This document shows, piece by piece, positions 10,480 through 37,997 of a stretch of DNA of 64,000 bases (position 1 is its first letter; every line of letters starts with the position of its first letter). The notes below the pieces were generated by a model, which was not told the DNA's origin, searched no databases, and saw only the letters and a list, made by a program, of their open reading frames with translations. This DNA comes from Malacoraja senta (Eukaryota): contig CM075982.1 of the NCBI GenBank assembly GCA_038087875.1, positions 15,872,001 through 15,936,000 of the forward strand, read 5' to 3'. Both the position numbers and the translations under genes were made by a program.

Positions 10480-10880
10480 TTAACATCTCTCACTCCCACT
10501 CAATGCCTGCCCTCCCTCTCACCCTCCCTCCACTCAATGTCTCCCTCCACTCAATGTCTCCCCCCACTCACCCCCCCATTCACTCACCCCCCCCTCACTG
10601 TCTTCTCCCCATTCACTCTCCCCCATTCACTGTCTCCCCCCCATTCACTGTCTCCCCCCATTCACTGTCTCCCCCCATTCACTGTCTCCCCCACACTCAC
10701 CATAACCCCCAATTCACCATATCCCCCCACTCACTGTCTCCCTCCCACTCACCATCATCTCCCCGTTCACCTCCTCTCCCCCACTCACCTTCCTTTCCCC
10801 CTACAGTTACTGTCATCCCACCACCGCCGCCCACCGTCCCCTCCCCTCACCACCTCACACTGGACCCTCACTGCTTCTGT
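10480..10880. repeat. C-rich minisatellite with a unit of about 18-20 bp (cccccattcactgtctc); G-rich on the minus strand
   Basis: Directly visible tandem units at 10600-10700. Confidence 0.85.
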
Positions 10881-12699: not shown

Positions 12700-13636
12700 C
12701 CGATGTCGGGAAGCTCCAACGATGCAGAAGGTTCGACTAGCCCCGACCCTGGATCGATCGCCTGGCGCGGGGTGATGAGATTTCCCCCCCCCCCCCCGAT
12801 GCAGGAGCTTGATCGCCCCGACGCGGAGGGCCCGACCGCTGGCTATGGGAGCCAAGTTCGTCCTGTCAATGGGAGGCTCAAGGCCCCCGACTGCAGGAGA
12901 ACAAAGAAGGGAAGAGATTGAACATTTTTTCGCCTTCCATCACAGTGAGGAATGTGGAGGAGTTACTGTGGTGGATGTTTATGTTAAAATGTATTTTGTG
13001 TGTCTTGTTGCTTTTTATTGGTATGACTGTATGGAAAATCAATACAGGGAGCTCCAGGTCCCTGGTGGGAGACGGCGTTTCGGAACTCCCGCAACGGCAA
13101 CCTCTCCCGCTGGAATCGCGAGGTTCAAAGGACACGGACGGGACTTACCATCGCCCGCCGGGGGCTCTAACATCGGAGCCCCAGTTCGCCTAGACACTGC
13201 AGTTGGACTGCGGGTTGGACTGCTTGAACCGCGGGGTTTGAAGGGCGCGGAGCCGGGGCCTAGCATCGCCCGGCGTGGCTGAATGTCCACGGGACTTGCC
13301 ATCGTCTGCCGGGGGCTTTAACACCGGAGCCCCAGTTCGCCTAGATGCTGCAGTTGGACTGCTGGACCGCGGGTGAAGAATAAAGGGAAGAGATAAGACT
13401 TTGCCTTCCATCACAGTGAGGAGGTGTTGGAGACTCACTGTGATGGATGTTTATGTAAACTGTGTTAAGTGTGGGTCTTGGTTTTTTTTGTAATGTGTTA
13501 AAAACCGTAGTAATGATATTTCGTTCAAGCCTAGGCTTGAATGAGAATAAATAGCATTCAATTCAAAATTCCTTGTGCTGTATGTTGCAAAACATACTTG
13601 GCTAATAAAGTATGATTATGATTATTATGATTATGA
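12700..13636 (+). mobile_element. Two nested GC-rich non-autonomous retroposons with a conserved hairpin and Rex1-type tails (inner copy about 13043-13566)
   Basis: Hairpin at 12932-12978 and 13403-13450. Tails: stem-loop + aataaa + (attca)n and (tatgat)n. Confidence 0.7.
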
Positions 13637-13699
13637 CGAATGTCACTGTGTGCTGAGGTTCTACCCATCCCTGGTGTTGGACTCATTGTTATGCAATGT

Positions 13700-14560
13700 T
13701 CCACTCAGATGGACATTGCCACACGGCCTGTCCTTCAGTAAAATAACACTCTCCAGCTAAACACCTTTGACCACGTCCATCAGGCAGTGGTTGAGCAGGG
13801 ACTATCCGGCAGGTCTGTGGAAATAGGACACTGTGGATCCTGTGGGATTGTTCCCCAAGCAGACTACCAAAGTTATTTGGCAGAACGCCTCAATCACCAG
13901 AACTCATGAGCAAGCAACTGGACCCTTTGCTTGCTTGGTGGTGAGAAGGGCCCTCTCTGTGCAGAACCGTTTCCACCAGGCCCTTCATGTAGAGCCTCAT
14001 GGAGATTGCTGTGGTGTGAATGAAACCACGGTCTTTCTCCTCAAGGACCAGGCATGTGCCGAGAAGGTTTGAACCAGAATGCAAAATCTTGTCAAGGTTC
14101 GGCCTGAGCATCCGCGTAACAGAGGACACTTTGATCTACCGGCTGTTCCCAGGAACGCACGTTAAGACAAACATCAACCACTGCTGGACGCTCGTCAACT
14201 TGGTGAAAGACACACTTTGCTCTGCCCAATGCTTGTTTGTTTTCCAGTGTAAGGAGATATCCACAAGTGAATGTGCCAATTGGCATTGTTCCAGTCTGCC
14301 GCAACACAGGCTGAGGGACACACTGAAGCTCGGTGCAGCCAACACAAAGGCTTGGTGGGATAGGACACCTCTGCCACTTCTGATCACTGGGGGCCTAACT
14401 ACAGAGCAACAGTGTCTCAAGTGGTGCGTTGTTTTATGGAGGAAACAGGATCAGTGTTGTGGATTTTACGACAATGTACTGAAATTGATGTTATAATGAA
14501 AGTAGAGAAAGGCAAGTCTTAAATGTATTTACTGTATATTTGGTGAATTAATTTATATAT
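13700..14560 (+). mobile_element. Tx1-clade (L1-group) LINE, ORF2 3' fragment, decayed
   Basis: WQNAS...LVVRRALSV...CCGVNET zinc-knuckle remnant; LIYRLFPGTH...VKDTLCSA...LRDTLKLGAANTKAWW. Confidence 0.75.
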
Positions 14561-15157
14561 TTAAAATAAAAATGACTCCCCTGTCTGTGCAATAGCCACA
14601 CAAGTGCATGTGGTTGAAATCATAAGCAATGTATCCCACTGAAATGTGCTCTTTAGTACACCGTCTAAGTGAACTTTGTAGACAGTCTATACTTATCCCA
14701 AAGTCCTGCTTTAGCATTGTTTCCTTCAATGACTTGCCCATTTAAATGGTTGCCTAAATGCCTCTTAAATGTGATGATTGTATTTGATTCCACCACTTCC
14801 TCTGGCAATGCGTTCCAGATACCTAAAATTGAGAATTCAATGTTCATACCATTGGATGGTAGGCTACCTAAGTGGAGTACCCAAGTGCAAAGACTTGCTT
14901 CACTTGCAATCCAACATCATAATCTGGTTTATCAAGAAATACTCATAATTTAGTGTATATTTATTTGCTTTGTTGTTGTCCTCCAGCAACAGCTAAAATA
15001 TCCTTAAACAACTAAAGAAAACAAAAACTCTGCAAAGATTAACAGTAATTTTTGTTTTTTAATTCTCAGTTCATAAAGTTAAACTAATTAAAAATGTACA
15101 TTAATTTCGAAATAGGAAAAGAAACAATACTATTGGTCTGAGGAAGGGTCTTGACGA

Positions 15158-17375
15158 GTATTTACCGAGGAGAAAGACAGTAGGACGGAGGAACTTGGGG
15201 CAGTCAATGGAAAGGGCCTGTCTCACTGCGGAGACCTAATTTGCGAGTTTAGAAGAGTTTGCGCTCGCCTCGAACTCGAAGCATGGTCGACACGTGGTCC
15301 TAGGAGGTCTATGTAGCTCTCCTTCATGCTCGAGAGAAGTTCCCGCATACTCGAGTTGTCAGTTTGGTCGAGGAGTATTTTATAGCATGCTGATAATTGT
15401 CCGCGAGTAAAAATTGGTCGGCATGGAAAAAAATCAATATTTTATTTACTCGTAGGTTTAGTCAAAGTAGGTCGTAGTAGGTCGGCATGTTATTCGTAGG
15501 TAATCAAAGGCAATCGAAGGTAATCAAAGGTAGTCGAAGGTGGTCGTCTTCACTCTCCACTAATTGGTGTCCAATTTTCCCGAAGCTAGTCGAAGCTAGT
15601 CTTCAACATAGTCGAAGGAGGTCGAAGGAGATCAAAGGAGGTCTTCTACATAGTCGAAGGAGGGTCTTCTACATATTCGTAGGAGGTTCTCAACATAGTC
15701 GAAGGAGGTCGTAGGAGGTGTACTAATTCGGCGATACAACAAGACCATGACACATTTTTTAACTCTCCTAAACTCTTCTAAACTCGCAAATTAGGTCCCC
15801 GCAGTGGGACAGGCCCTGAAGTGTCTTGAGAGCAGTCAGTGTTACCGTCGAAGAAGTACTGAAGGTACTGACAGTATGATGGTAGACAAATCTCTCGGGC
15901 CTGATTAGATATCTCTGAGGACATTGTGGGAAACTAGAGAGGAAATTGCGGGAGTCCTGGTTGAAATTTACGAGTCGTCCTTAAATACAGGAGAGATGCC
16001 GGAAGACTTGAAGATGGCAAATGTTGTGCCTCTTTTCAAGAAGTGCTGCAGGGAACTATAGGCTGGTGAGCTTAAAATCTGTAGTTGGAAAGTTACTAGA
16101 GAGTATTCTGAGGGATAGGTTATACAGACATTTAGATGGGCACGGGCTGATTTGGGATAGTCAGCATGGTTTTATACGTGGGAGCTCACAAATCTGATAG
16201 TTTTTTTGAAGATGTGACCAAAAAGGTCAATGAGAGCAGAGCTGTAGATGTTGTGTACATGGATTTCAGTAAGGCATTCGACAAGGTTCCGCATGATAGG
16301 CTGCTCTGGAAGGTTAGATTGCATGGGATCCAAGGAGAGATAGCAAATTGGCTCCATGGAAGGAAGCAGAGGGTGATGGTGGAAGGTTGCTTCTCGGACT
16401 GGAGGCCTGAGACTAGTGGTGTGCCTCAGGGTTCAGTGCTGGGCCTGTTACTGTTTGTCATCTACTTCGATGATTTGGATGGGAACATACAGGGCAAATT
16501 AGCAAGTTTGCTGATGATACAAACGTTAGTGGTTTTGCAGATAGTGAAGATGGTTGTGAAGGATTGTAGCAGGATCTGGATCGATTGGGCCAGATGGGCT
16601 GAGGAATGGTTGATGGAATCTAATACAGAGAAGAGTGAGGTGTTGCATTTTGGGAAGTCGAACAAGGGCAGAACCTACACAGTGAATGGTAGTACAGGTG
16701 CATGGTTCTTTGAAGGTCGAGTCGCAGGTAGATAAGGTGGTCAAAAAGGCTTTTTGGCACATTGGCCTTCATCAGTCAGGGTACTGAGTATAAAAGTTGG
16801 GAGGTCATATTGCAGTTGTATAAGACGTTGGTGAGACCGCATTTAGAATATTGTGTTCAATGCTGGGCACCATGTTACAGGAAAGATATTGTCAAGCTTG
16901 AAAGGGTTCAGAGAAGATTTACGAGGATGTTGCCAGGACTAGAGGGTGTGAGCTATAGGGAGAGGTTGAGTAGGCTGGGTCTCTATTCCTTGGAACGCAA
17001 GAGGATGAGGGGGTGATCTTATACAGGTGTACAAAATCATGAGAGGAATAGATCAGGTAGATGCACAGTCTCTTGCCCAGAGTAGGGGAATCGAGGACCA
17101 GAGGACATAGGTTCAAGGTAAAGGAGAAAAGGTTTAATAGGAATTTGAGGGGTAACCTTTTCACACAAAGGGTGGTGGGTGTATGGAACAAGCTGCCAGA
17201 GGAGGTAGTTGAGGCTGGGACTATCCCATCGTTTAAGAAACAGTTAGACAGGTACATAGATAGGACAGGTTTGGAGGGATATGGACCAAGAGCAGGCAGG
17301 TGGTAGCTGGACATGTTGACCGGTGTGGGCAAGTTGGGCCGAAGGGCCTTTTTCCACAATGTATCACTCAATGAC
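15158..17375 (+). mobile_element. CR1 LINE (RT to 3' end), decayed, interrupted by a MITE
   Basis: [55 protein letters not shown]; multiple frameshifts. Confidence 0.92.
15213..15817. mobile_element. Non-autonomous TIR element (PIF/Harbinger-like) with internal 9-bp repeats
   Basis: TIRs of about 48 bp agggcctgtc(t/c)cactgcgg...aatttgcgagtttagaagagttt; 3-bp TSD gaa (15210-12, 15818-20); host CR1 continues on both sides. Confidence 0.85.
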
Positions 17376-17925
17376 CCGAAACGTCACCCATTCCTCCTCG
17401 CCGGAGATGCTGCCTGTCCTGCTGAGTTACTCCAGCATTTTGTGTCTATCTTTGGTTTAAACCAGCATCTGCAGTTCCTTCCTTGACAAAACTATGAGCT
17501 TCATTTATCTTTTGACTGAAGCTTGGTGACCCTATTCAGAAGAATATTAGTCCAAATCTCAGGGGGACAGGTACAAAGTATGTCCAACCCTTGGTCAGGA
17601 GTCAGGACAGTTCACAACTGCTCCTGGACATTGGCAAGTCCAGCCGTGGGAGAGAGCGGACAGATGGCTGCCACCCAACTTCAGTGCATCCTGTTCTTCA
17701 ACTCCACATCGCATGGACACGGAAGTCCAAATTGCCCGAGCAGCTGTGCTCCAATTAACTGGCGAATCCCAGCAGAACTTCCGACTTAAAATCAGCGTAA
17801 TAGAGCCTGTTGTCTTCAGTGTAAGAAGGAACTGCAAATGCTGGTTTAATCCGAAGATAGACACAAAAGCTGGAGTAACTCAGCGGGACAGGCAGCATCT
17901 CTGGAGAGAAGGAATGGGTGCAAGT

Positions 17926-17953
17926 CTGAAGAAGGGTCTCGACCCGAAACGTC
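17926..17953 (+). ncRNA. Minimal hammerhead core in a fold-back PLE repeat (17820-18021)
   Basis: CTGAAGAA GGGTC TC GACCC GAAACGTC. Confidence 0.6.
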
Positions 17954-19174
17954 CCCCATTCCTTCGCTCCAGAGATGCTGCCAGTCCCGCTACGTTACTC
18001 CAGCTTTTTGTGTCTATCTTCTGTTGTCTTCAGTGCCTGTCATCTATCTTCTGTCTTCAGTGCATGTCACACAACATTCACAGCCATCTTCACTCATCCA
18101 ATCTCGCACATTCCTTGGCCAAAGCTATTCATTTCCCATTGATCGATGTGGCCTTGAGATGAGCTTCCAATCACACTATTGCCGTCTCCTTAACCTGTTC
18201 ACTGCCAAGATGTTTTTTCACTTGTATACTCTGACCCGTGTGTACTCGGGGGTGGCACTGAACAGGTTAACCTCAATACCACTGGCTGCTCCTCCTATTG
18301 CTGTAGTCTGGAACTGTTTCTTCTTGAGTTAATTGTTTCAATCTCCTCCTGACCACTCCTTCCTCCTGCCAGTGTTAGTATTACCTCATCCGTGGGTGGG
18401 TTGTACCCTTGGGTCCTACTTGGGTAAAGTTTGCATAAAGCTCTTTGTGACCACCGAGTGTTTCAATCCTCTCCCACATCTCAAAGGTTCGATGAGCTAG
18501 TGTTATTGCCTTTGGGACAGATCGGTGGCTAATTTGACTACTGGAACCGATGGGAATACTCTTAAGTGCTGGTATTGGCTCAATGAGCCAAATGGACCTG
18601 ATCTATGTTGTGAGAAACATAAGAAAATATATGCCTCTGTGATCTATAATTTTTGCATACTCTTGATTTTGCCAGTGGCTGCCATGCATTCAGTTGCTGG
18701 GACTTACCTCCCTATATTTCTCTGGCTTTTAACCTCACCATCTTTTTAACCTTTTTAACCTCACGAGGCACCCTGAAGCTTATCTCTGTGACCAAGCTTT
18801 TATTTTTTCTCTCCCAATACAGGGCTGCCAAGTCTCACGCTTTGAGCGTGAGAATCACGCATTTGAATGAACTCTCACGCCCTCACGCTGATCAGAAATT
18901 TCTCACGCTCTGTGGTGAGAAATGTTGTGATCAACGAACATTTCAAAACTCAGATACACTGCATGGTCCGCGGGTGTTGGAGAGCCGGGGCTGAGGGAGG
19001 GATGGAAGCAGCGGGCGGATACAGATGCGGGGAGTCGGGGCTGGCCAGTGTTTGCGGGGCTGGCGAGTCGCTCGCTGGAGCTCCGGCCATGGAGCAGCCC
19101 CAGTGCGAGAGTCCCGGGCCGTCGGAGTCGTCGGAAGCGTTGCGCCGCTGGCTTCGGCACAGAGACTCTCAAAG

Positions 19175-20265
19175 GTAGGTAGAGAGAGAGGGGAAGGAGA
19201 CAGGGAGACGGGGGAGAGAGGGTGAGAGGAGAGAGAGGGGAGAGACAGAGGGGGAGTGAATGGAGCGAGAGAAGAGGGAGAGGGGGGGAAGAGGGAGAGA
19301 GAGGGGGAGAGTGAGGTGGGAGGGGGAAAGAGAGAGAGGGATGAGAGGGAAGAAAGAGGGATGAGAGAGGGAAGAGAGGGGGTGGAGAGGAGGAGAGGGT
19401 AGGAGAGAATGTGAGAGAGAGGGGGAAGAGAGGGGGTTGGTAAAAGAGAGAGGGGAAGAGGGGGAAGAGGGAGAGAGGGGGAAAGAGAGAAACAGGGGAA
19501 AGAGAGAGAGAGATGGGGGGGCAAAGAGAAATAGGAGATAGAGACAGAGGAGAAAGAGAGCAAGAGGGAGAGTGAGGTGGGAGGGAGAAATGGGGGAGAG
19601 AGAGAGGAGGAGAGAGGAGGAGAGAGAGAGAGAGAGAGGGGGGAAGAGAGAGAGGCGAGAGAGAGAGAGGAGAGACACAGAGAGAGGGGAGAGTGTGTGG
19701 AGNNNNNNNNNNNNNNNNNNNNNNNNNNNNNNNNNNNNNNNNNNNNNNNNNNNNNNNNNNNNNNNNNNNNNNNNNNNNNNNNNNNNNNNNNNNNNNNNNN
19801 NNNNNNNNNNNNNNNNNNNNNNNNNNNNNNNNNNNNNNNNNNNNNNNNNNNNNNNNNNNNNNNNNNNNNNNNNNNNNNNNNNNNNNNNNNNNNNNNNNNN
19901 NNNNNNNNNNNNNNNNNNNNNNNNNNNNNNNNNNGAGAGTGAGGCGGGAGGGAGAGAAGGGGAGAGAGATGGAACAGAGGAGAGAGAGGGGGGGAGAGAG
20001 AGAGAGGGGGAGAGAGAAAGAGAGAGGGGAGGGGAGTGAGTGAGGGGGAGACAGGGGAGAGAGAGGGGGTGAGAGGAGAGACAGAGAGGAGAGAGAGAGA
20101 GGAAGAGAGGGGAGGGGAAGAGAGAGGGGGGAGAGGAGAGAGGGAGAGTGGGGAGAGAGAGAGGGGAGAGAGAGAGAGAAAGAGGGGGAGAGAGAGAGGG
20201 GGAGAGAGAGAGGGAGAGAGAGAGGGGGAGAGAGAGAGGGGGAGAGGGGGGGAGAGGGGTAGGAG
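19175..20265. repeat. Polypurine (GA-rich) tract containing an assembly gap (N 19703-19934)
   Basis: Directly visible. Confidence 0.95.
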
Positions 20266-20755
20266 GCAGGCTGCCAACTCCCATGCATTGAGCCTGAGAA
20301 TCCCGCATTTCGTCAAATTCTCACGCTGATCACAAATTTCTCTCGCTCTGTTGTGAGAAATTCTGTGATCAACGAAAATTTCAAAACTCATATCAACTGC
20401 ATGGGCCATGGGTGTTGGAAGCAGTAGCAGCGGCGGGGACAGATGCGGACGGGGAGCGGGGCTGGCGAGTGTTTGCCGGGCTGGCGAGTCGCTCACTGCA
20501 GCTCCGGCCATGGAGCAGCCTCAGTGCACGGCGTCGGATGCGTTGCGCCGCTGCCGTGAGAGTCTCTGTGCCAAATTCGCCCAGGTGACCGGCATGGATC
20601 AGGCTGCAGCTCGGTGCATCCAGGAGGACAACCAGTGACTGCTGGAAGTAAGTACCAAGCACTGGGTAGAAACGGTGGAAGATAGTGGACTTCAAATGGG
20701 GGTGGTTGGAGAAAGCACCCTGCTTGCCTGCTAGATTTTCACTTACTGCAACTGC

Positions 20756-21390
20756 AGGAAAAATGTTCCCGATGTTGGGGGAGTTCAGAACCAGGGGTCA
20801 CAGTTTAGGAATAAAGGAGGGGCCAGTTAGGACTGAGATTATACTTTCTTCACACAGAGAGTTGTGAATCTGTGGAATTCTCTGCCACAGAAGGCAGTTA
20901 AGGCCAATTCACTGGATGTTTTCAAGAGAGAGTTACATTTAGTTCTTGCAGCAAAGGACACCAAGGGATATGGGGAAAAAACAGGAAAGAGGTACTGATT
21001 TTAGATGAATAGCCATGATCATATTGAATGGGAGTGCTGGCTCGAAGGGCCGATGGCCTATTCCTGCACCTATTTTCTATGTTTCTATGCTTGAGTATAT
21101 GGCAATAAAACTAGATCACTTGATTTTGAAGCATTCATGCATGGTGGAGGTATAATGTAGTCATAGAGTGATACAGTGTGAAAACAGGCCCTTCTGCGCA
21201 ACTTGCCCACACCCGCCAACATGTCCCAGCTACGCTACCTGCTTTTGGTCCATACCTCCAAAACCTGTCCTATCCATGTATCAGTCTAACTTTTTCTTAA
21301 ATGTTGGGATGGTCCCTGCCTTAACTACCTCCTCTGGCAGCTTGTTCCATACACCCATCACCCTTTGTGTGCATAAAGTTACCCGTTAAA
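20756..21390. mobile_element. Two CR1 3'-end fragments (20756-21090 +, 21160-21390 -)
   Basis: FFTQRVVNLWNSLPQ-type end and CR1 3' UTR stem-loop with short-repeat tails. Confidence 0.8.
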
Positions 21391-22589
21391 AAGTTACCTC
21401 TTAAAAATACTTCATACAAAAAACATTGAAATCATACTTCTACAATGCACTAAAACATGATTTTATTACATCAAATTTCAAAATGTTCCTACCCTGGGAG
21501 GGGGGACACCCTTCCTCCACACCCTCTCCCCACTCGGTTGCACCACTCCCTCACCGGGTACCCCCAAGGCCAGTGATCAGTGATCGCTCAGCCTCCCCCC
21601 TTTCAAAAATGCTCCAATCCAATTTAAAGCATATATATTGCATTCAAGTGTAAGTTAAAAGACTCGTTACAGTATGCACCATATTGCACAATTTCAAGCT
21701 GAAAAATGCAAAAGTTCCATACCAATGGGAGGGGGGACACCTTCCTCCCCCCCCCCCCCCCCAGTCGCTATGCTCCCTCAGGCTTGGTCTTTCGCAATTT
21801 CTCACTCCCAACTCTCACCCAATGTTGGCAGCCCTGCCTAATATCTCCTTATGTGACATGAAATCAAACATATTTTAACAATGTGTAGGAAGGAACTGCA
21901 GATGCCGAGGTTAGACACAAAATGCTGAAGTAGCTCAGCAGGACAGGCAGCATCTCTGGATAGAAGGAACGCGAAGGGTCTCGACCCAAAGCGTCGCCCT
22001 TTCTTTCTATCCAGAAATGCTGCCTGTCCCGCTGAGTTACTCCAGCATTTTGTGTCTATATTATAACAATAGTGCTGTGAAGAGCCTGGAGATGTTTTAG
22101 CATGAAATAGGTGGCATACAAACAAAAGTTGTTGCTGTCTAAATAGGTTGACACCATTGGTAAACTAACACAACAGGCTGGCATTTATAATCAAATACGA
22201 TGTACCACTGAAGAGAAAAATACGAATTTGTGACTCTTGACATTTCATGGCATTTGCGGTTTAATTAGAAAAAACTAGCTGTCTTTCATTTGACTTTCCA
22301 GTGGTAATCTATCTCATGTGTTTTTTGTCTCTGAATGGAATGATTGTCAGTTCTGTCACAAGCCACTTTTCAGCAACTGTGGAAGGCATATCGCAGGAGG
22401 CATTGTGTATGGTCATTTTCTTGCTATTGCCACTAATGTATTTCTGGTGTAAATTCATGCATAGAAAATATATGATATGACCTCTCCAGATAAATCACAC
22501 AATAGATAGTGATTTATTCACTAAAGCATGAACCATCTCTCTGCAATCTTCCCGGGTCCTTTGCAACAGGTGAAGAGGAAAGCAGTTTC

Positions 22590-23180
22590 ACTTTCCCCCC
22601 CCTCCCATTCCCACAATGAGCTTTCTGGTCTGGGCCACCTCCACTGTCAGAGTGTGGCCCAACGCAAATTGGAGGAACAGCACCTCATATTTTGCGGTAT
22701 GAATTATGATTTCTCTAACTTCAAGTAACCCTTGCTTTCCCTCTCTCTCTGTCCCTCCCCCACCATAGTTCTCCGACTCACTGTCCTGATTAAATTTACT
22801 GTTTGTTTGCCTCATTGACACCTTCCCCTCAGCCAACAATGAACCATTGTACATCTGCCTACTATGTTCTGTTGTGCTCAAGCAAAGCAAGAATTTCATT
22901 GTCCTACCAGGGACACATGACAATAAACTCACTTGACTTGACTTGACATTTTCTTGATCAACATCTGTTTTGATCTGTCCTTTTCACACCTTGCATGTTC
23001 TTTGTACCCTTCCATATTTCTAATTTCCCTCCCCCCTTGACTCTCAGTCTGAAGAAGGGTCTCGGCCCGAAACGTCACCCGTTCCTTCTCTCCAGAGATG
23101 CTGCCTGTCCCGCTGAGTTACTCCAGCATTTTGTGTCTATCTTCTGTGTAAACCAGCATCTGCAGCTCCTTCCTACACAT
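22590..23180 (+). mobile_element. PLE 3' end (GIY-YIG C-terminus, UTR, pseudo-LTR), interrupted by a Rex1-type tail at about 22855-22947
   Basis: ORF 22528..22728 ends LHCQSVAQRKLEEQHLIF...DFSNFK. It is followed by a pyrimidine-rich UTR and the same pLTR repeat found throughout the window. Confidence 0.85.
23049..23076 (+). ncRNA. Minimal type I hammerhead ribozyme core in PLE pseudo-LTR
   Basis: CTGAAGA-A-GGGTC-TC-GGCCC-GAAA-CG-TC: CUGANGA, helix II, GAAA, palindromic ACGU helix III and GUC cleavage triplet. Helix I is weak (gt/ac). Confidence 0.65.
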
Positions 23181-25939: not shown

Positions 25940-26895
25940 AACTGGATGTTCTCCACTGAACCATATCAGTTCGGTCATAGTGCGAACTCCATCATCAAGT
26001 TCGCTGACAACACCACTGTTGTGGGACGTATCACTGATGGGGATGAGTCAGAGTATAGAAGAGAGATCGAGCGACTGTCCATATGGTGCCAGCACAATAA
26101 CCTGGCCCTCAACACCAGCAAAAGCAAGGAACTGATTGTGGACTTTGGAAGGAGTAGGATGGGGACCCACAGTCCCGTTTATATCAACGGGTCTATGGTT
26201 GAAAGGGTCAAGAGCTTCAAATTCCTGGGCGTGCACATCTCTGAAGATCTTTCCTAGTCCGAGAACACTGATGCAATTATCAAGAAAGCTCATCAGCGCC
26301 TCTACTTCCTGAGAAGATTACGGAGAGTCGGTTTGTCAAGGAGGACTCTCTCTAAATTCTACAGGTGCACAGTAGAGAGCATGCTGACTGGTTGCATCGT
26401 GGCTTGGTTCGGCAACTTGAGCGCCCTGGAGAGGAAAAGACTACAAAGAGTAGTAAACACTGCCCAGTCCATCATCGGCTCTGACCTTCCTTCCATCGAG
26501 GGGATCTATCGCAGTCGCTGCCTCAAAAAGGCTGGCAGTATCATCAAGGACCCACACCATCCTGGCCACACACTCATCTCCCCGCTACCTTCAGGTAGAA
26601 GGTACAGGAGCCTGAAGACTGCAACGACCAGATTCAGGAATAGCTACTTCCCCACAGCCATCAGGCTATTAAACCTGGCTCGGACAAAACTCTGAACATT
26701 AATAACCCATTACCTGTTATTTGCACTTCATTTTATTTATTCATGTGTGTATATATTTATATAATGGTATATGGACACACTGATCTGTTTTGTAGTCAAT
26801 GCCTACTATGTTCTGTTGTGCTGAAGCGAAGCAAGAATTTCATTATCCTATCAGGGACACATGACAATAAACTCTCTTGAACTTGAACTTGAACT
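25940..26895 (+). mobile_element. Rex1/Babar LINE, 5'-truncated (RT C-terminus, 3' UTR, (ttgaac)n tail)
   Basis: IIKFADNTTVVGRITDGDESEYRREI...LNTSKSKELIVDF; FYRCTVESMLTGCIVAWFG...LPSGRRYRSL. Same UTR at 41347-41633 (-); related tail at 50806-51135 (-). Confidence 0.85.
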
Positions 26896-28701: not shown

Positions 28702-31700
28702 TGTAGCAGGGACTCGCAGGAGTCCACCTAAAAACTAGTCGGACACGGGTTGCGTGCACTAGACGTGTTTATTCTCTCCAATACAGCTCCCTACTCTCTC
28801 CAGGTCCTGGGCGTTGCCCGGCCTTAAATACCAACTCAGGTACCGACCCAATGACTAGCGCCTCCCACACCAAGACACCGCCCTCGAGAGCCGATGGTTC
28901 GTTGTGCCCTTGGGTTGCCACCAGGTGCCGCCACATGACCCCCCCCCCCCCAGAACCAGAGGCACTGAACCGGACGGGACGCCGAACGAGGTGGCCCGAA
29001 TGCGTAGATACAATCCCACGCCCTGGGGGCTTGCTTGGTTCGGAAGAATCTCCGGGAGCCCGGGACGGCGGACGCCTGCGATGGTGCGTTTGAGCCACAT
29101 GGACTGGCTCGCTCAGGTCCAAGTGGGCCGGTTTCAAACGAGCCACAGACACCGTTTCACGCCGGCCGTCCAAATCGAATGTAGTAGGCCCGTGCCGCAG
29201 CACGCGAAAGGGACCTTCATACGGGCGCTGCAAGGGCGACCTGTGGGAGTCACGGCGAAGAAAAACGGATGTGCAGCCCATCAGCGGCAGTGGCACATGG
29301 GAAGGGACCACTCCATGAAGCGACGTTGGGATGGGAGACAGGGCGCTGACCCTCTCCCCCGAGTGGATCAGCACGGATGACGGGGGTTCCTGAGACCCAT
29401 CTGTGGCAGGGACAAACTCCCCGGGGACGGTGAGCGGAGCACCATACACCAACTCCGCGGAGGACGATGACAGATCGTCCTTGAGGGCCGTCCGAATACC
29501 CAACAGGACCCATGGCAACTCGTCCATCCACCCAGGGCCTGTGAGACGAGCCTTCAGGGCAGCCTTCAGACGGAAGTTGAACCTCTCCACCAACCCATTT
29601 GACTGGGGATGGTACGATGTCGAGTGGTGGAGCTGCGTCCCCAACAGGCGGGCCATGGCGGACCACAGTTCGGACATGATGTGAAGTGGATCCCCAAAGC
29701 GGGCAATCCAAGTTACCACGAGGGCACGACCGAGTTGAAGTGTCCGTGAGCGAGATGGCCTCCAGCCACCGCGTAAAATGGTCCACCACAATAAGCAGGT
29801 GCAAAACACTCTGGGACGTAGCCAGTGGCCCCACGATGTCCACGTGCACGTGATCGAACCGCCGGCGTGGCACTGTGAAGTCTTGAACGGGCGCCCGGAC
29901 GTGTCGATGCACCTTCGAAGTCTGGCATAGGATGCATGCCCGGGCCCAGTGAGCGAGCTGCTTCCGAAGTCTGTGCCACATAAATCTTGCGGCCACCATG
30001 GCGACCGTGGCCCGGATAGATGTGTGGGCCAGTCCACGGATCACCCCAAACACACGACGGCGCCAGGCCACCGGAACGATAGGCCTCAGCTGATCTTTGG
30101 ATACGTCGCAGAGGATGGAACCCGAGGGACCCAACGGCACATCCTCAAGCACCAAGCCAGAGATCGCGGTGCAGTACGCCGGCATCTCATCGTCCACCAG
30201 CTGGGCCGCCGTCAAGGCGGAGTAATCTATTCCTGAGGCCGGGTTAAGCATGGCTACAATTGCTGGACGGGACAAAGTATCCGCCACTAGATTGCATATC
30301 CCGGCGATGTATCGGACGTCCGTTGTATACTCCGAAATAGCCACCGTAGCCATCCGCGGACCAAGGATCTGAAACCTTTGCAAAAGCAAACGTGAGGGGC
30401 TTGTGGTCCGTGAAGGCTATGAATGAACTGCCCTCGAGGAAGTACCAGAAGTGCCGCACTGCGAGGTGTAAGGCGAGCAACTGCTGGTCGAAAGCGTTGT
30501 GGCGTTGCTCCGCAGCTCTCAGGTGATGGCGAAAGAAGGCGAGAGGCCGCCAATGGCCGTTAACCGACTGTTCCAAAACGCCGCCGACCGCAGTCCGATG
30601 CATCCATGGTAAGGGCTGTGGGGGCGCCGGCCGACGGATGCATGAGCATAGTCGCCCGAGCCAAGGCCTCCTTCGTCCCTTTAAACGCGGCCGTGGCAAC
30701 AGTGTCCCCCTGTATCTCCCGTTGCTTGCCCGTCAGCGACTGGAAAAGCAGCCGCAAAAGTTTGGCAGACACTGGAACGAACCGGTGGTAAAATGCGACC
30801 ATCCCTCCGAACTCCCAGAGGCCACTTACAGTAGCAGGCCGCTGGAACTGGCGGATTGCCTCAACCCTGTCCGGCTGAGGCACTGCTCCGTGCTGTGTCA
30901 CCCGATGCCCCAGGAAGTTGAAGGCCGAAGGCCGAACTGGCACTTGCCAGGGTTAATTACGAGGCCATGGTCACTGAGGCGCTGGAAGAGTAGACGCAGG
31001 TGGGCGCAGTGTTCCTCTCGCGAGCGATTTGCCACGAGGATGTGGTCCAAGTAGACAAACAGGAAGTAAAGCCCGTGCACCACGGTGTCCATCAGGCACT
31101 GAAAAGCCTGCACGGCGTTCTTGAGGCCGAAGAGCATCCGCGGGAACTCGAACTACCCAAACTGGGTGATAATTGCCGTCTTGGGGGCATCCTCCGGTTG
31201 CACGGGGATCTGGTGATATCCCCGGACTAGGTCGATCTTAGAGAAGAACCTAGCTCCGGCCAGATGTGCTGAGAAATCCTGTATGTGGGGAATAGGGTAA
31301 CGGTCAGCGGTCGTGGCCTCGTTAAGGTGGCGGTAGTCCCCGCACGGCCTCCAGCCGCCGGATACCTTCGGCACCATGTGCAGTGGGGAAGCCCATGGGC
31401 TGTTGGAGCGTCGAACGATTCCCATGGCCTCCATAATCCGAAACTCCACCTTTGCTATGAGGAGCTTGTCAGGAGTGGGCCTGCGGACGCGGGCGTAGAG
31501 CGGTGGATCCGATGTCAGAATATGGTGTATGACACCGTGCCTCAGGCTGGCGAAGCCGAACTTGGGGGTGACAATGTCCGGAAACTCAGCCAGTACCTGG
31601 GCGTAGACATTGCCCACCGTCGCTACGGGATTGCTGACCATCGCGGTGGGCGCAGTACAACGCAAGGAGATCTTCTCAAAAGTTGACGCGTGGATGAGAT

Positions 31701-33047
31701 GTTGGCCCACGTCCACAAGGTGCCCACAAGAAATCTGCGCCCAGCAGCGGCTGGACCACGTCCTCGTTGATGAAAGAATGGGCAGGTGAAATGGCACGCG
31801 CCCAAAATGATGGGAACCGTGCGGATGCCATATGTGTGGATCGAACTGCCATTCGCAGCAATTAACGAGGGGCCCCTCTTACCAGCACAAAGGTCGAGTC
31901 CAGATGGGGGCAATACGCTGACATCCGCCCCGGTGTCCACCAAGAACCTGAGCCCCGAGCGCCGGTCCCAGACATAGAGTCGCTGGATCCTGCTGGCCAC
32001 CGTGGTGACTATCGGCAGCCAGCGCTGCCGTTTCCTGGAAACTAACATGGCTGGCGGCATTGGCGGGCTGCTGAACCCCAGTGTGGGTGGTAAAAACCCC
32101 ACATCCTTTTCCTTGGATCTCCTGGGTCCTGCTCAGCCATCCTCCTCTCCTGTGCCACTTGTCTTGTCTGTGGCTCTTGTGGGCGTGGTCATGGGTCGCT
32201 GGGCCTGCCAGGGCGTTGAATCAATCCGGCCCAGCAATTCTGGGGACTCCAGCGGTTCCAGGTCTCCCAGCGCGCCCACCTGCTGCTGGTCGGAAATCCA
32301 CAGCTCATCAGCGCTGCAGTTAGGTAAATTCAAAGTGCGGGCAGGGCTGATGATCGCCCATGAGCATGAGCATCTCGCTCATGAGGGCCGAGGGCATCTG
32401 AGTCCCTGAGCCCTCCCATGTTGAGGACCTGAGCAGCTCCTTGAGGCCTGTGTACTACCCGCCGCCGGCAGATTATCCAGGTAACGATACAACGATACAA
32501 CGATACAAGTTATTTGTTGTCATTTGAACAGAAATTTGGTTTCTGCAGTCATACAAACAAGAAAATGAAAGGAATGACCCGACCGGCCGTCTGCTGGTCA
32601 AAGGCACTTACCACATAGTGGTAACGAGTCTCGTCAGCCATGACGCCGCGAATGAAGAATTGGGACTCGGCCTGTCGAGGTCGAGAATGTAGGCAGCTTC
32701 AGGGAGACCGCATTGAGTTCGGCCACGTCTGCCTCGTAGGTGGTAGTGGCAAAATGCTTTTTTTTTCCAAATTTCCCTTCCAGGATTACACTCCTGGGTG
32801 TCAGGGTCATCATTGTAGCGGGGACTCGCAGGAGTCCAGCCAAAAACTAGTCGGACACGAGTTGTGTGCACTAGACGTGTTTATTCTCTCCAATACAGCT
32901 CCCTACTCCCTCCAGGTCGCAGGCGTTGCCCGGCCTTAAATACCAACTCAGGTACCGACCCAGTGATTAGCACCTCCCACACCAAGACACCACCCTCCAG
33001 AGCCAATGGTTTGTTGTGCCCTTGGGTTGCCACCAGGTGCCGCCACA
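28702..33047 (-). mobile_element. Full-length decayed Ty3/Gypsy LTR retrotransposon
   Basis: 234-bp TG...CA LTRs at 28702-28935 and 32814-33047. PPT G-run next to 28935. PBS remnant tgatgaccctgac (tRNA-Trp-like). Gag AVSLKLPTF; PR FLVDTGADVS; [32 protein letters not shown]; RH FTDHKPL; INT HVDIVGPL, YHPQSNGLVER, GPF. Confidence 0.96.
28960..32740 (-). pseudogene. Gypsy gag-pol, frameshifted; gag interrupted by a short retroposon tail (about 32484-32573)
   Basis: Domain order PR-RT-RH-INT spread over ORFs 31623..32102, 31153..31797, 30898..31137, 30560..30943, 30244..30699, 29250..30389 and 28769..30037. Confidence 0.92.
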
Positions 33048-34287
33048 ATGTCCAGGTTCAGGAGCAGCTTTTTCTCAACGACCGTCAGAATCTGAATCAG
33101 ATGGGAGAGTCGTCATTGCACTGTGTTGGAACAAGGATAAAAGTGGGGACAGCCCAAATTATTATACAAGAAAGTATCTTGGAAAACTTGAACCTAATTT
33201 TTTTTAATTTTAATTTTTGTGTTGGCTGCTAAAAATTAAACGCTACAACCTCCAACTAAGCTCCGAACTGCATAGACTTGAGGATAATTGTTTTGTCTAA
33301 GCTCTATTTTTGTTTGCTTGTCTTTTTTATATATATACTGAACTTCTTTTGTGTAGGAGATGCTGCAGATGCTGGTTTACATTGAAGATAGTCACAAAAT
33401 GCTGGAGTAACTCTGCGGGGCAGGCACCATCTCTGGATAGAAGGAATGGGTGATGTTTCAGGCCGAGTGATCAGCCATGATCATATTGAATGGCAGTGCT
33501 AGCTCAAAGGGCCGAATGGCCTACTCTGCACCATAGAGTTTTCTATGTTTACTCGTCCATACTAATCCTAGTTTCCAGCGTTTGGCCCATTGTGTTCCAT
33601 GCATTGGTGATTCAAGTGCTCATTTCAATGCTACTTAAACTTTGCAAGAACCTCTCCTTTAGACAGTGCGTTCCAGTTCCCAATCATCCTCTGACTGAAA
33701 ATATTTTCCTTTGCACTCCCTGAAAACCCCCTAGCCCTTATCCTAAACCTCTCATGCTGCGTTTAGCATCTCTTCTCTGAGGAAAGGGTTCTTACTATCT
33801 ACCCTATCTATAACCATATAACCATATAACCATTACAGCACGGAAACAGGCCATCTCGGCCCTTCAAGTCCGTGCCGAACACTTTTTTTCTTTCTTTTTT
33901 TAAAATTACTTCCCCCCTAGTCCCATCTTCCTGCACTCAGACCATAACCCTCCATTCCTTTCCCGTCCATATACCCATCCAATCTATATTTAAAGGATAG
34001 AATCGAACCTGCCTCCACCAATTCCACTGGAAGCTCATTCCACACAGCTACCACTCTCTGAGTAAAGAAGTTCCCCCTAATGTTACCCCTAAACTTCTGT
34101 CCCTTAATTCTCAAGTCATGTCCCCTTGTTTAAATCTTCCCTACTCTCAATGGGAAAAGCTTATAGAAACATAGAAACATAGAAAATAGGTGCAGGAGTT
34201 GGCCATTCGGCCCTTCGAGCCTGCACCGCCATTCAATATGATCATGGCTGATCATCCAACTCAGTATCCTGTACCTGCTTTCTCTCC

Positions 34288-34601
34288 TGGAGGGCCGTGG
34301 AGTTTGAACCGGATTCAGCCGCGGGACTGACTTACCATCACCCGGCGGGGTCACAACATCAGAAGCCTGGATCGCCACAGCGCAGTGGGAGAACAAAGAG
34401 GGAAGAGACAGAGACTTTAAGACTTTTGCCTCCATCACAGTGAGGAGGTGTCTGGTGAACTCACTGTGGTGGATGTTAATTTGTGTTTATTGTGTGTTTT
34501 GTTATTTATTATATGTATGACTGCAGGCAACGAAATTTCGTTCAGACCGAAAGGTCTGAATGACAATAAAGGAATCTAAATCCAAAAAAAAAATCTAAAA
34601 A
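34288..34601 (+). mobile_element. GC-rich hairpin retroposon (5'-truncated) inserted in a CR1 3' UTR
   Basis: Interrupts CR1 ttctctcc|ataccccc with tcc duplicated. Hairpin 34428-34476; tail ttcagaccgaaaggtctgaa-tgacaataaa. Confidence 0.8.
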
Positions 34602-37070
34602 TCCATACCCCCTGATCCCTTTAGCCACAAGGGCCACATCTAACTCCCTCTTAAATATAGCCAATGAACTGGCCTCAACTACCTTCTGTGGCACAGAATT
34701 CCAGAGATTCACCACTCTGTGTGAAAAATGTTTTCCTCATCTCGGTCCTAAAAGATTTCCCCCTTATCCTTAAACTGTGACCCCTTGTTCTGGACTTCCC
34801 CAACATCGAGAACAATCTTCCTGCATCTAGCCTGTCCAACCCCTTAAGAATTTTGTACGTTTAGAAGATTGAGATCCCCCCTCAATCTTCTAAATTCTAG
34901 CGAGTACAAACCGAGTCTATCCAGTCTTTCTTCATATGAAAGTCCTGACATCCCAGGAATCCGTCTGGTGAACCTTCTCTGTACTCCCTCTATGGCAAGA
35001 ATGTCTTTCCTCAGATTAGGAGACCAAAACTGTACGCAATACTCCAGGTGTCGTCTCACCGAGACCCTGTACAACTGCAGTAGAACCTCCCTGCTAATAC
35101 ACTCAAATCCTTTTGCTATGAATGCTAACACACCATTCACCTTTTTCACTGCCTGCTGCACCTGCATGCCTACTTTCAATGACTGGTGTACCATGACACC
35201 CAGGTCTCGTTGCATCTCCCCTTTTCCTAATCGGCCACCATTCAGATAATAGTCTACTTTCCTATTATTGCCACCAAAGTGGATAACCTCACATTTATCC
35301 ACATTATACTGCATCTGCCATGCATTTGCCCACTCACCCAGCCTATCCAAGTCACCTTGCAGCCTCCGAGCATCCTCCTCACAGCTAACACTGCCCCCCA
35401 GCTTCGTGTCATCCGCAAACTTGGAGATGTTGCATTCAATTCCCTCATCCAGTTCATTAATATAAATTGTAAATAGCTGGGGTCCCAGCACTGAGCCTTG
35501 CGGTACCCCACTAGCCACTGCCTGCCATTGTGAAAAGGACCCGTTTACTCCCACTCTTTGCTTCCTGTTTGCCAGCCAGTTCTCTATCCACATCAATACT
35601 GAACCCCCAATACCGTGTGCTTTAAGTTTGTATAGTAATTTCTTATGTGGGACCTTGTCGAGAGCCTTCTGAAAGTCCAGATACAACACATCCACTGGTT
35701 CTCCCCTATCCACTCTACTAGTTACATCCTCGAAAAATTCTATAAGATTCGTCAGACATGATTTACCTTTCATAAATCCATGCTGACTTTGTCCAATGAT
35801 TTCACCACTTTCCAAATGTGCTGCTATCCCATCTTTAATAACTGAGTCTAGCAGTTTCCCCACTACCGAAGTTAGACTAACTGGTCTGTAATTCCCCGTT
35901 TTCTCCCTCCCTCCCTTCTTAAAAAGTGGGGTTACGTTTGCTACCCTCCAATCCTCAGGAACTACTCCAGAATCTAAAGAGTTTTGAAAAATTATCACTA
36001 ATGCATCCACTATTTCTGGAGCTACTTCCTTAAGTACTCTGGGATGCAGCCTATCTGGCCCTGGTGATTTATCGGCCTTTAATCCATTCAATTTACCCAA
36101 CACCACTTCCCGACTAACCTGGATTTCACTCAGTTCCTCCATCTGCTTTGACCCGCGGTCCCCTGCTATTTCCGGCAGATTATTTATGTCTTCCTTAGTG
36201 AAGACGGAACCAAAGTAGTTATTCAATTGGTCCGCCATATCCTTGTTCCCCGTGATCAATTCACCTGTTTCTGACTGCAAGGGACCTACATTTGTTTTAA
36301 CTAATCTCTTTCTCTTCACATATCTATAAAAACTTTTGCAGTCAGTTTTTATGTTCCCTGCCAGTTTTCTTTCATAATCTATTTTCCCTTTCCTAATTAA
36401 GCCCTTTGTCCTCCTCTGCTGGACTCTGAATTTCTCCCAGTCCTCTGGTAGACTGCTTTTTCTGGCTAATTTGTGCGCTTCATCTTTTGTTTTGCTACTA
36501 TCCCTGATTTCCCTTGTTATCCATGGATGCACTACCTTCCCTGATTTATTTTTTTGCCAAACTGGGATGAACAATTGTTGTAGTTCATCCATGCAGTCTT
36601 TAAATGCCTTCCATTGCATATCTACCGTCAACCCATTAAGAAGCAATTGCCAGTCTATCTTGGCCAATTCACTTCTCATACCCTCAAAGTTACCTTTCTT
36701 TAAGTTCAGGACCCTTGTTTCTGAATTAACAATGTCACTCTCCATCCTAATGAAGAACTCAACCATATTATGGTCACTCTTGCCCAAGGGGCCACGCACA
36801 ACAAAACTGCTAACTAACCCTTCCTCATTACTCAATACTCAATCTAGAATAGCCTGCTCTCTCGTTGGTTCCTCTACATGTTGGTTTAGAAAACTATCCC
36901 GCATACATTCCAAGAAATCCTCTTCCTCAGCACCCCTGCCAATTTGATTCACCCAATCTATATGTATATTGAAGTCACCCATTATAACTGTTTTACCTTT
37001 GTTGCACACATTTCTAATTTCCTGTTTGATGCCATCCCCAACTCCACTACTACTGTTAGGTGGCCTGTAC

Positions 37071-37997
37071 CAATTACCAATTACCAATTACCAAGCACTT
37101 TATTTGTCCCCGAGGGGCAATTTAAACAAACAATACATTTAATCTGCACCGACCGGTCGACCGCATGAGCAGCGACCCGGCAATGGATTGGGTTGTCAGC
37201 AGCGATACAATAAAAAAGAACACACAAAAGGTAACACAAACATCCACCACAGCATTCATCACTGTGGTGGAAGGCACAAAAATTTGGCCAGTCCTCCTCC
37301 ATTTCCCCCCCGTGGACAGGACCAGAGTCCAAGTCAGTCCAGGATCGGCTCTTCCTCACCGGAGACCGCGGCTTTAGATTGTTGTGGGCCGCAGGCCGGC
37401 GGTCAAGATTTAAAGTTCCCTGCCGCAGCCAGAAGCACCGTAGACTGCAGGGCCGGCGGTCGAAGCTCCCCTCCAGGGGTGATGGTAAGTCCATGCCGGC
37501 CCCGCGGTAGAAGTTGGCCGCGGGCCGGCAATGATGGCTTCTTCTTCTTCCCCCGGGTCCCCCACGAGGGATCCCGGGCTGTAGACGCCGCACCAGCTGG
37601 AGCTTTGCAGACCGCGGCTTCAGACTGCGACTTCAGGCTGCCGGCTGCCCCGGGCCAGCGAAACGGAGCGCTCCCCTCCCCTCCAGCGAGCCCCAGCGAG
37701 GGTTCACCCGCTCCATGCCGAGAGTCCACGCTGCGCCCGCCGCTGAAGCCCGGGCACGTCTCCGGGAAAGGCCGCGCCGATCCTTGATGTTAGGCCACGG
37801 GGGAGGCGACCTGGAAAAAGTCGCCTCTCCATGGAGGAGGCGACCGAAGCGGTTTCCCCCTTACCCCCCCACACCACCCCCCACACAAGACATACAAAGA
37901 AACATTAATTACACACTTTAAAACATACTAAAAATAAAAAATAAAGTTGAAAAAACTGACGCACTGCTGACATGGCTGCTGCCAGAGCAGCGCCCCC
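37071..37997 (-). mobile_element. GC-rich hairpin retroposon, probably full length, inserted in the CR1 endonuclease domain
   Basis: Interrupts ctgtac|acaac (compare 61729-61740) with tac duplicated. Hairpin 37240-37275; Rex1-like end aattgcccctcggggacaaataaagt + (ggtaatt)n. Confidence 0.8.

What the first reader, a model, noticed from the sequence alone, without database searches (positions are those of the whole stretch)
12700..37997. GC-rich non-coding retroposon family with a covarying RNA hairpin and interchangeable Rex1-type tails
Seen: four otherwise divergent inserts (12700-13636 outer, 13043-13566 inner, 34288-34601, 37071-37997 minus) share GCC(T)TCCAYCACAGTGA-loop-CTGTGRTGGATGT followed by a TG/T-rich tract. 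The loop varies freely, while one stem pair runs U-A (13403), U.G (12932, 34428), C-G (37240), which is the pattern expected from selection on RNA structure. Each copy ends in a different stem-loop + AATAAA + microsatellite tail, of the same architecture as the Rex1/Babar tails in this window. No tRNA A/B-box head and no ORF is visible. Inference: a non-autonomous family mobilised by Rex1/Babar RT that carries its own conserved structured RNA domain. I do not recognise it as a named SINE.
Basis: partly seen in the sequence, partly recalled or inferred. Interest (0 to 1): 0.72.

Follow-up and report, generated by a model that had tools for sequence, protein, structure and literature searches.

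The report
Abundant gene-less skate retroposon with hairpin
These are copies of a very abundant, protein-less jumping element of skates that most likely borrows the copying enzyme of a Rex1-like LINE through its tail; its internal hairpin is strongly conserved but is not shown to covary, so this is an unusual form of a familiar genomic parasite that the scan has met many times.

Summary
Four inserts share a 45-nt hairpin block followed by a T/G-rich tract, far above chance. No other copy with the hairpin exists in the window. A fifth, 5'-truncated, tail-only copy lies at 32483-32576 (minus). The assembly gap (19703-19934) touches none of them.

Public skate runs laid on 12600-13750 give the hairpin block a depth about 10^4-10^5 times that of the unique flanks and 5-100 times that of either GC-rich body there. 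PolyA RNA reads are about 9:1 strand-biased.

The claimed covariation in the internal hairpin is not supported. One pair runs U-A/U.G/C-G, no pair changes on both sides, and 374 of 500 shuffles do as well. Real covariation sits in the tail stem-loop. The inner and 34 kb copies share one tail type with three Rex1-like LINE 3' ends in the window (3 pairs changed on both sides, 0/500 shuffles).

The bodies are CpG-island-like subrepeat arrays. T-runs before the tail argue against Pol III. No tRNA, Rfam or Pfam match was found.

Best reading: a Pol II-type, non-coding retroposon that depends on a LINE. It resembles SVA or CORE-SINEs in design, a new variant of a known kind. Other windows of this scan hold the same family. 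Repeat catalogues (Dfam, Repbase) could not be checked.

The parts
12700..13042 (+). Outer copy, 5' part: GC-rich subrepeat body (12700-12905), purine-rich tract, hairpin 12936-12975, T/G-rich tract ending in GGTATGACTG
   Evidence: Read depth rises from about 76 to more than 20,000 within 12678-12716.
13567..13636 (+). Outer copy, 3' part after the nested insert: tail stem-loop (GUAUGUU-GCAA-AACAUAC), AATAAA at 13604-13609, (TATGAT)n microsatellite at 13611-13636
   Evidence: The joint 13042->13580 in many contigs of other copies shows the uninterrupted form. The tail bin has a depth of 1.5 million.
13043..13566 (+). Inner copy nested in the outer one. It is 5'-truncated relative to the family RNA. 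Its body has a 151-bp internal duplication (13138-13214 / 13289-13365, 90%). Hairpin at 13407-13447, tail stem-loop at 13519-13546, AATAAA at 13546-13551.
   Evidence: Loose-end consensus upstream of 13055 in RNA reads (table 7).
34288..34601 (+). 34 kb copy, 5'-truncated, inserted in the 3' region of a CR1-like LINE. Hairpin at 34431-34473, tail stem-loop with GAAA loop at 34538-34563, AATAAA at 34565-34570.
   Evidence: (the intact target is seen in the second CR1 copy at about 59350)
37071..37997 (-). 37 kb copy, 927 bp, inserted in the endonuclease domain of the same CR1-like LINE, so both ends are exact. It has a 127-bp AT-rich head with a small hairpin and a T/G tract, a 571-bp GC-rich body, a shortened hairpin at 37271-37243, its own tail, AATAAA at 37104-37099 and a (TGGTAAT)n microsatellite.
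32483..32576 (-). It is a tail-only, 5'-truncated copy: the end of the T-rich tract, GTATGACTGCAG, a tail of the 34 kb type whose stem-loop is deleted, and (GTATCGTT)n. It sits inside a gag-like ORF.
   Evidence: score 36 against the 34 kb tail, 0 of 1000 shuffles
25988..26895 (+). Rex1-like LINE fragment (RT C-terminus, 3' UTR, tail, (CTTGAA)n). It is the candidate partner type for the tail of the inner and 34 kb copies.
22826..22947 (+). Second Rex1-like LINE 3' end with the same tail, ending in (ACTTG)n
41345..41800 (-). Third Rex1-like LINE 3' end with the same tail

Best explanation
The inserts belong to a very abundant, protein-less retroposon family of skates, 0.3-0.9 kb long.

Each copy has five parts: (i) a GC-rich, CpG-island-like body made of variable subrepeats; (ii) a purine-rich tract; (iii) a conserved 45-nt hairpin; (iv) a U/G-rich tract with UGUA motifs; (v) a LINE-type tail (stem-loop, AAUAAA, short tandem repeat).

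Shown here: modular anatomy, nesting, 5' truncation, very short (3-4 nt) target duplications, huge copy number, presence in polyA RNA with a strong strand bias, and a tail stem-loop shared with Rex1-like LINE 3' ends and kept by compensating changes.

Inferred mechanism: the element is transcribed by RNA polymerase II, perhaps from the CpG-rich body. The reverse transcriptase of a Rex1/CR1-group LINE recognises the tail stem-loop and repeat ('stringent' 3'-end recognition) and copies the RNA into a nicked target (target-primed reverse transcription). Incomplete copying gives truncated copies. Tails are exchanged between subfamilies.

The internal hairpin is a conserved core inherited by all subfamilies. 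Whether it is kept by selection, for instance for RNA stability or particle assembly, is open. I put that at about one in three.
For: Four hairpin copies plus one tail-only copy.

Depth of laid contigs (run X1): unique flanks 43-76, hairpin bins 1.3-2.6 million, outer tail 1.5 million, inner tail 0.11-0.16 million, GC-rich bodies 0.02-0.47 million. Runs labelled as several organisms hold about 30% of the 31-mers. Most laid contigs are 90-99% or more alike.

PolyA RNA raw reads: the first mate lies on the minus strand about 9:1 across body and hairpin.

No coding or known RNA.

Tail of the inner and 34 kb copies against three Rex1-like LINE ends: 97.8% of cells paired, 3 pairs changed on both sides, 0 of 500 shuffles reach the covariation score, and slid controls give 18-51% paired. 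Folds have z -5.4 and -4.6.

Bodies: GC 0.61-0.67 and CpG o/e 0.80-0.89, against 0.47 for the window. T runs of 4-8 lie between body and tail in every copy.

Exact insert ends come from the interrupted CR1 ORFs.

Literature: stringent 3'-end recognition and SINE/LINE tail sharing (PMC3747384); Rex1 has a conserved 3' UTR followed by short repeats (PMC6274825).
Against: No autonomous LINE in the window carries the outer-type or 37 kb-type tail.

The assignment of the partner fragments to Rex1/Babar rests on my memory of the C-terminal peptide (...SGRRYRSLKTATTRFRNSYFPTAIRLLN) and on only 26.5% identity to the CR1-type RT here. It was not checked against a repeat library.

Pol II transcription and a promoter in the body are inferred. 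No transcript starts or ends were seen (table 6), and the strandedness convention of the RNA library is assumed.

Summed contig depth is not a copy number.

Only four or five copies could be studied base by base.
Confidence: 0.75

Rival explanations
1. The internal hairpin is a functional structured RNA domain kept by selection on pairing. It would define a new 'core-domain' superfamily.
For: The hairpin block is 88-96% identical between copies whose bodies align poorly. 98% of stem cells pair, and all three stem substitutions keep pairing through G.U. Loop indels are common in the family (table 4). The one odd stem base of the outer copy (12964 T) is C in about 98% of other copies, which restores a G-C pair (table 3). 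The G.U pairs fit an RNA structure on the sense strand rather than a DNA palindrome.
Against: No pair changes on both sides, and 374 of 500 shuffles do as well. Three pairing-compatible transitions have about a 1 in 8 chance under neutrality. The unpaired flanks (GCCTTCC, GGATGTTT, the T/G tract) are conserved too. The block has no CpG, whereas the bodies are CpG-rich, so unequal decay and common descent from young masters explain much of the contrast.
Confidence: 0.33
2. The copies are ordinary 5'-truncated 3' ends (long 3' UTRs) of an autonomous LINE. The hairpin block would be part of that LINE's 3' UTR.
For: The depth profile rises toward the 3' end as in truncated LINEs. Truncated and tail-only copies exist. 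The tail matches LINE tails.
Against: The three Rex1-like LINE 3' UTRs in the window share only the last 35-45 nt and lack the hairpin block and GC-rich body. The 927-bp copy has exact ends and no coding similarity. Other copies' contigs begin near 12704-12705 like the outer copy, which hints at a defined 5' end (table 8).
Confidence: 0.1
3. Origin variant: the family is an internal-deletion derivative of a Rex1-like LINE, with the LINE's 5' UTR repeat array (promoter) fused to 3' UTR sequence. This resembles RTE-derived MAR4 and RTESINE1.
For: ORF1-less CR1-group LINEs, Rex1 included, can carry arrays of 100-500-bp subunits near the 5' UTR (PMC13343379, section 15). The bodies here are subrepeat arrays (a 151-bp unit in the inner copy) and are CpG-island-like. 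PMC3747384 (table 1) lists SINE-like elements that use a LINE 5' end as promoter.
Against: No full-length Rex1-like LINE is in the window, so nothing could be compared. The hairpin block is absent from the Rex1-like 3' UTRs present here.
Confidence: 0.2
4. The palindrome acts at the DNA level, either as a recombination-signal-like CACAGTG/CACTGTG heptamer pair or as the inverted ends of a tiny DNA transposon.
For: Both arms contain the heptamer CACAGTG or its complement.
Against: Only 13-15 bp (3 bp in the 37 kb copy) lie between the heptamers. No nonamer-like element follows at 12 or 23 bp. The flanks are inverted, not direct, so no target duplication exists. G.U pairs would be C.A mismatches on the other strand. 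The block always sits at the same place inside a retroposon.
Confidence: 0.02

Closest known systems
CORE-SINEs, V-SINEs (including HE1 of sharks and rays) and Deu-SINEs
   Same: A conserved internal domain of unknown function is shared by subfamilies that carry different LINE-derived 3' tails. They depend on stringent-type LINE partners of the CR1/L2 group (PMC3747384, table 1).
   Different: Those have tRNA or 5S Pol III heads and are under about 500 bp. Here there is no such head, T-runs would stop Pol III before the tail, the body is a GC-rich subrepeat array of up to 570 bp, and the core sequence matches no Rfam family.
SVA/LAVA/PVA composite retroposons of hominoids
   Same: Non-coding, with a GC-rich VNTR-like centre of variable length and an AATAAA near the 3' end. 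They are found in polyA RNA, mobilised in trans by a LINE, and often 5'-truncated.
   Different: SVA rides on L1 through a poly(A) tail (relaxed recognition) and is built from Alu and HERV-K pieces. The skate family ends in a stem-loop plus microsatellite tail of the stringent type and has a conserved hairpin core.
UnaSINE1/UnaL2 and other stringent SINE-LINE pairs
   Same: The 3' stem-loop and terminal short repeats are shared between the non-autonomous element and the LINE. The stem is kept by compensating changes (PMC3747384).
   Different: The partner here looks like Rex1/Babar rather than L2. The 2013 compilation (PMC3747384) lists only one Rex1-tailed SINE, in a sea anemone.
Rex1/Babar LINE 3' UTR
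   Same: The last 35-45 nt match: UUUC(G/A)UU, helix, AUGACAAUAAA, then a microsatellite.
   Different: The rest of the LINE 3' UTR and all coding sequence are absent from the family. The LINE lacks the hairpin block.

Membership tests
Non-autonomous LINE-dependent retroposon (SINE-like, stringent type) | No protein-coding capacity of its own | tested here: met
   No Pfam hit in the 170- and 199-aa ORFs of the 927-bp copy. No tblastn similarity to the window's RT and EN proteins. All three frames are broken by stops.
Non-autonomous LINE-dependent retroposon (SINE-like, stringent type) | 3' tail shared with an autonomous LINE (stem-loop plus terminal short repeats) | tested here: met
   Met for the tail type of the inner and 34 kb copies against three Rex1-like LINE ends. 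Not testable for the outer and 37 kb tails, because no matching LINE lies in the window.
Non-autonomous LINE-dependent retroposon (SINE-like, stringent type) | Dispersed, high copy number, with insertion signatures (nesting, 5' truncation, short target duplications) | tested here: met
   Depth 10^4-10^5 times that of the flanks and empty-site joints. Inserts split CR1 ORFs exactly. A tail-only copy exists.
Classical SINE (Pol III) | tRNA-, 5S- or 7SL-derived head with an internal Pol III promoter | tested here: not met
   ARAGORN finds none. Rfam finds none at gathering score or at E up to 10. T4-T8 runs lie upstream of the tail in all copies.
Structured RNA family under selection (covarying hairpin) | Significant compensatory covariation in the internal hairpin | tested here: inconclusive
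   Four sequences, 0 pairs changed on both sides, and 374 of 500 shuffles as good. More copies could not be obtained.
Rex1/Babar-dependent element | The partner LINE belongs to the Rex1/Babar clade | not testable with these tools
   The C-terminal peptide matches my memory of Rex1/Babar. Its RT is only 26.5% identical to the CR1-type RT here. No repeat library or named relatives are available.
SVA-like composite retroposon | Pol II transcript with a VNTR-like GC-rich centre and a polyadenylation signal, mobilised in trans | tested here: inconclusive
   The subrepeat, CpG-island-like body and AATAAA are shown. Strand-biased polyA RNA is shown. No transcription start was mapped, and mobilisation was not tested.

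The most novel reading that the evidence does not exclude
The purine tract, hairpin and U/G tract form a selected, structured RNA core. It would define an undescribed superfamily of Pol II-driven, CpG-island-bearing retroposons in skates, present at some 10^4-10^5 copies. The family would swap tails among CR1-group LINE partners, and the hairpin would serve RNP assembly or RNA stability independently of the RT-recognition stem-loop.
Probability: 0.25. Interest if true: 0.55.

Novelty: new variant of a known kind. Interest (0 to 1): 0.38.

Why it matters
If the family is indeed uncatalogued, it is one of the commonest repeats of skate genomes. It would also be a rare vertebrate case of a head-less, probably Pol II-transcribed retroposon riding on a stringent-type (Rex1-like) LINE. 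Thousands of CpG-island-like bodies and AATAAA signals scattered through genes could affect methylation maps, promoter calls and 3'-end formation in skate annotation. The contrast between a covarying tail stem-loop and a merely conserved internal hairpin gives a clean experimental handle on what a CR1-group reverse transcriptase actually reads. The element is not a new class.

Tried and rejected
- Collecting more copies largely failed. A word-based protein search with a spurious ORF across the hairpin returned one 55-aa protein (P0001, an outer-type copy).
- Exact-pattern scans of metagenome, viral and prokaryotic genome contigs gave 0 hits.
- The reads table was cut before the Y/R positions of the hairpin, so family-wide pair frequencies are unknown.
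- Rfam gave nothing at gathering score. At E up to 10 it gave only chance hits, such as mir-324 at E 0.43 with 18.9 bits against a 70-bit cutoff. I reject a microRNA precursor: the stem is only 11-14 bp.
- A longer stem between the purine tract and the T/G tract is predicted in three copies but is not consistent, with z -0.1 to -2.9. I leave it open.
- RSS-like or MITE readings of the CACAGTG palindrome are rejected on anatomy.
- Sequence similarity of the outer or 37 kb tails to any LINE end in the window is at chance level. The only exception is a 13-nt identity of the outer tail (13572-13584) with a CR1 3' end at 3552-3564 (E 0.047). Together with GTATGACTG resembling the CR1 (TATGACTC)n repeat, this hints at stacked old and new tails but is too short to claim.
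- The literature searches found no description of this family.
Full report
**What is there**

The window comes from a skate genome (scan notes). The motif pair TCCAYCACAGTGA and CTGTGRTGGATGT occurs exactly four times in hairpin arrangement:
- + 12936-12978 (outer copy)
- + 13407-13450 (inner copy)
- + 34431-34476 (34 kb copy)
- - 37271-37240 (37 kb copy)

Hit counts exceed all 100 shuffles. A covariance model built from the four copies and run without filters finds no further copy in the 64 kb.

Each copy folds into an 11-14 bp stem, with z -2.6 to -4.6. The 37 kb copy has lost the apical part.

The assembly gap at 19703-19934 lies inside an AG-rich low-complexity tract, more than 6 kb from any copy. 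It is irrelevant to the finding.

**Boundaries**

- The 37 kb copy (927 bp) splits the endonuclease domain of a CR1-like LINE between ...VGVVY and RPPNSS. Both of its ends are therefore exact.
- The 34 kb copy splits the 3' region of the same LINE. The intact target is visible in a second CR1 copy near 59350.
- The inner copy sits inside the outer one. Many contigs and reads from other family members join 13042 directly to about 13580, so the uninterrupted outer form exists (table 5).
- Target duplications are only 3-4 nt.
It is a 94-bp tail-only copy at 32483-32576 (minus) inside a gag-like ORF.

**Anatomy**

From 5' to 3' each copy has five parts.
1. A GC-rich body built of subrepeats. The inner copy has a 151-bp unit, and the motif GGACTTRCCATC recurs in three copies. 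GC is 0.61-0.67 and CpG o/e is 0.80-0.89, against 0.47 for the window.
2. A purine-rich tract.
3. The hairpin.
4. A T/G-rich tract with TGTA motifs, ending in GTATGACTG.
5. A tail made of a stem-loop, AATAAA and a microsatellite.

Every copy has T runs of 4-8 between body and tail. These would terminate Pol III before the tail is transcribed. There is no tRNA, no Rfam family, no Pfam domain and no similarity to the window's RT or EN proteins.

**Abundance and RNA**

I laid public runs on 12600-13750 at 80% likeness or more. Depths in run X1 were:

| Region | Depth |
|---|---|
| Unique flanks | 43-76 |
| Hairpin bins | 1.3-2.6 million |
| Outer tail | 1.5 million |
| Inner tail | 0.11-0.16 million |
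| GC-rich bodies | 0.02-0.47 million |

Summed contig depth is not a copy number. Even so, the hairpin module is clearly a very high-copy repeat, and it is much commoner than either of the two bodies laid here. Several differently labelled organisms hold about 30% of the stretch's 31-mers.

In polyA RNA raw reads, the first mate lies on the minus strand about 9:1 over body and hairpin, and about 3:1 over the tails. In the usual stranded libraries this means sense-strand RNA. No discrete starts or ends appeared (table 6).

**The covariation claim**

On four sequences, however, no pair changes on both sides, and 374 of 500 column shuffles reach the observed score.

The three stem substitutions all keep pairing through G.U, which has roughly a 1 in 8 chance under neutrality. 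The unpaired flanks of the block are conserved as well. The block also lacks CpG, while the bodies are CpG-rich. The hairpin is therefore conserved, but covariation is not shown.

I could not enlarge the sample:
- The word protein search gave a single spurious ORF.
- Three collection scans were blank.

**Where covariation does exist**

Aligned with the 3' ends of three LINE fragments in the window (22894-22927, 26838-26871, 41365-41398 minus), they share UUUC(G/A)UU ... AUGA(C/G)AAUAAA. The inner helix has different sequences in each:
- CAGACC/GGUCUG (34 kb copy)
- CAAGC/GCUUG (inner copy)
- GUCCU/GGGAC (LINE fragments)

Over 9 pairs, 97.8% of cells pair and 3 pairs change on both sides. None of 500 shuffles reaches the covariation score, and slid controls pair only 18-51%. 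Five sequences are few, but this is the pattern expected of a 3' recognition stem-loop shared by a stringent-type LINE and its parasite (PMC3747384).

The LINE fragments end in ...SGRRYRSLKTATTRFRNSYFPTAIRLLN. From memory I take this for the Rex1/Babar C-terminus. Their RT is only 26.5% identical to the CR1-type RT in the window. Rex1 is described as having a conserved 3' UTR followed by short repeats (PMC6274825). No repeat library was available to confirm the clade.

The outer-type tail (the commonest by depth) and the 37 kb tail have the same architecture. No matching LINE for them lies in the window.

**Mechanism**

Shown: a modular, non-coding, high-copy, nested and truncated retroposon with a LINE-shared, covarying tail stem-loop, present in polyA RNA with a strand bias.

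Inferred: Pol II transcription, possibly from the CpG-island-like body. Recognition of the tail by a Rex1/CR1-group reverse transcriptase, followed by target-primed reverse transcription. Tail exchange between subfamilies.

Open: what the internal hairpin does.

A possible origin is fusion of a LINE 5' UTR repeat array to 3' sequences. ORF1-less CR1-group LINEs are reported to carry 100-500-bp subunit arrays near the 5' UTR (PMC13343379).

**Comparison and novelty**

In design the family combines two known patterns. One is the conserved core with exchangeable LINE tails seen in CORE-, V- and Deu-SINEs. The other is the head-less, GC-rich-VNTR, polyA-signal design of SVA. It fails the defining test of a classical SINE, because it has no Pol III head.

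I file it as a new variant of a known kind. Earlier notes of this scan describe the same family in several other windows, and they disagree on whether the hairpin covaries. Here it does not demonstrably do so. Dfam and Repbase could not be consulted, and three literature searches found no description.

Noticed in passing
window 34200-38600 (minus): A CR1-like LINE (EN ORF 37997-38575, RT ORF 34844-36835) was hit twice by the same retroposon family, once in the EN domain and once in the 3' region. A second, less interrupted copy lies at 59300-62309 (minus), with RT parts about 94% identical at the protein level.
   Followed up: partly
window 3400-3581 (+) and 34163-34260 (minus-strand element): CR1-type 3' ends with 8-nt microsatellites ((TATGACTC)n and (ATAGAAAC)n). 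The outer-type tail shares a 13-nt identity (CTTGTGCTGTATG) with the end at 3552-3564. The family's GTATGACTG also resembles that repeat unit. This may be a relic of an older CR1-type tail under the present one.
   Followed up: partly
window 28769-33000 (minus): A GC-rich (0.55-0.61) LTR/DIRS-like retroelement with integrase zinc-binding and core domains (ORFs at 28769-30389) and a gag-like ORF near 32600-32800. The tail-only copy interrupts the gag-like ORF.
   Followed up: no
window 19181-20256: A long AG-rich low-complexity array on both sides of the assembly gap (19703-19934). The long ORFs listed there (up to 522 aa, minus strand) are artefacts of the repeat and the N run.
   Followed up: no
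window 10484-10801 and 45015-45393: Two minisatellites: a C-rich 17-bp unit (CTCCCCCCACTCACTGT, about 14 copies) and an 18-bp unit (CTCTCTCAGTCCTGGAGT, about 21 copies).
   Followed up: no
window 37871-37997 (minus): The 5' head of the 927-bp copy repeats the design of the 3' module in miniature. It has a small GC hairpin (GCUGC-UCUG-GCAGC) followed by a T/G-rich tract with T5-T6 runs. This could be a remnant of a second unit or a template-switch chimera.
   Followed up: no
window 13602-13750: A contig of a run labelled as a different organism (X3, organism B) covers the outer copy's 3' end and unique flank with only 2 differences in 149 nt. That label is therefore the same or a very close species and carries the same insertion.
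   Followed up: no
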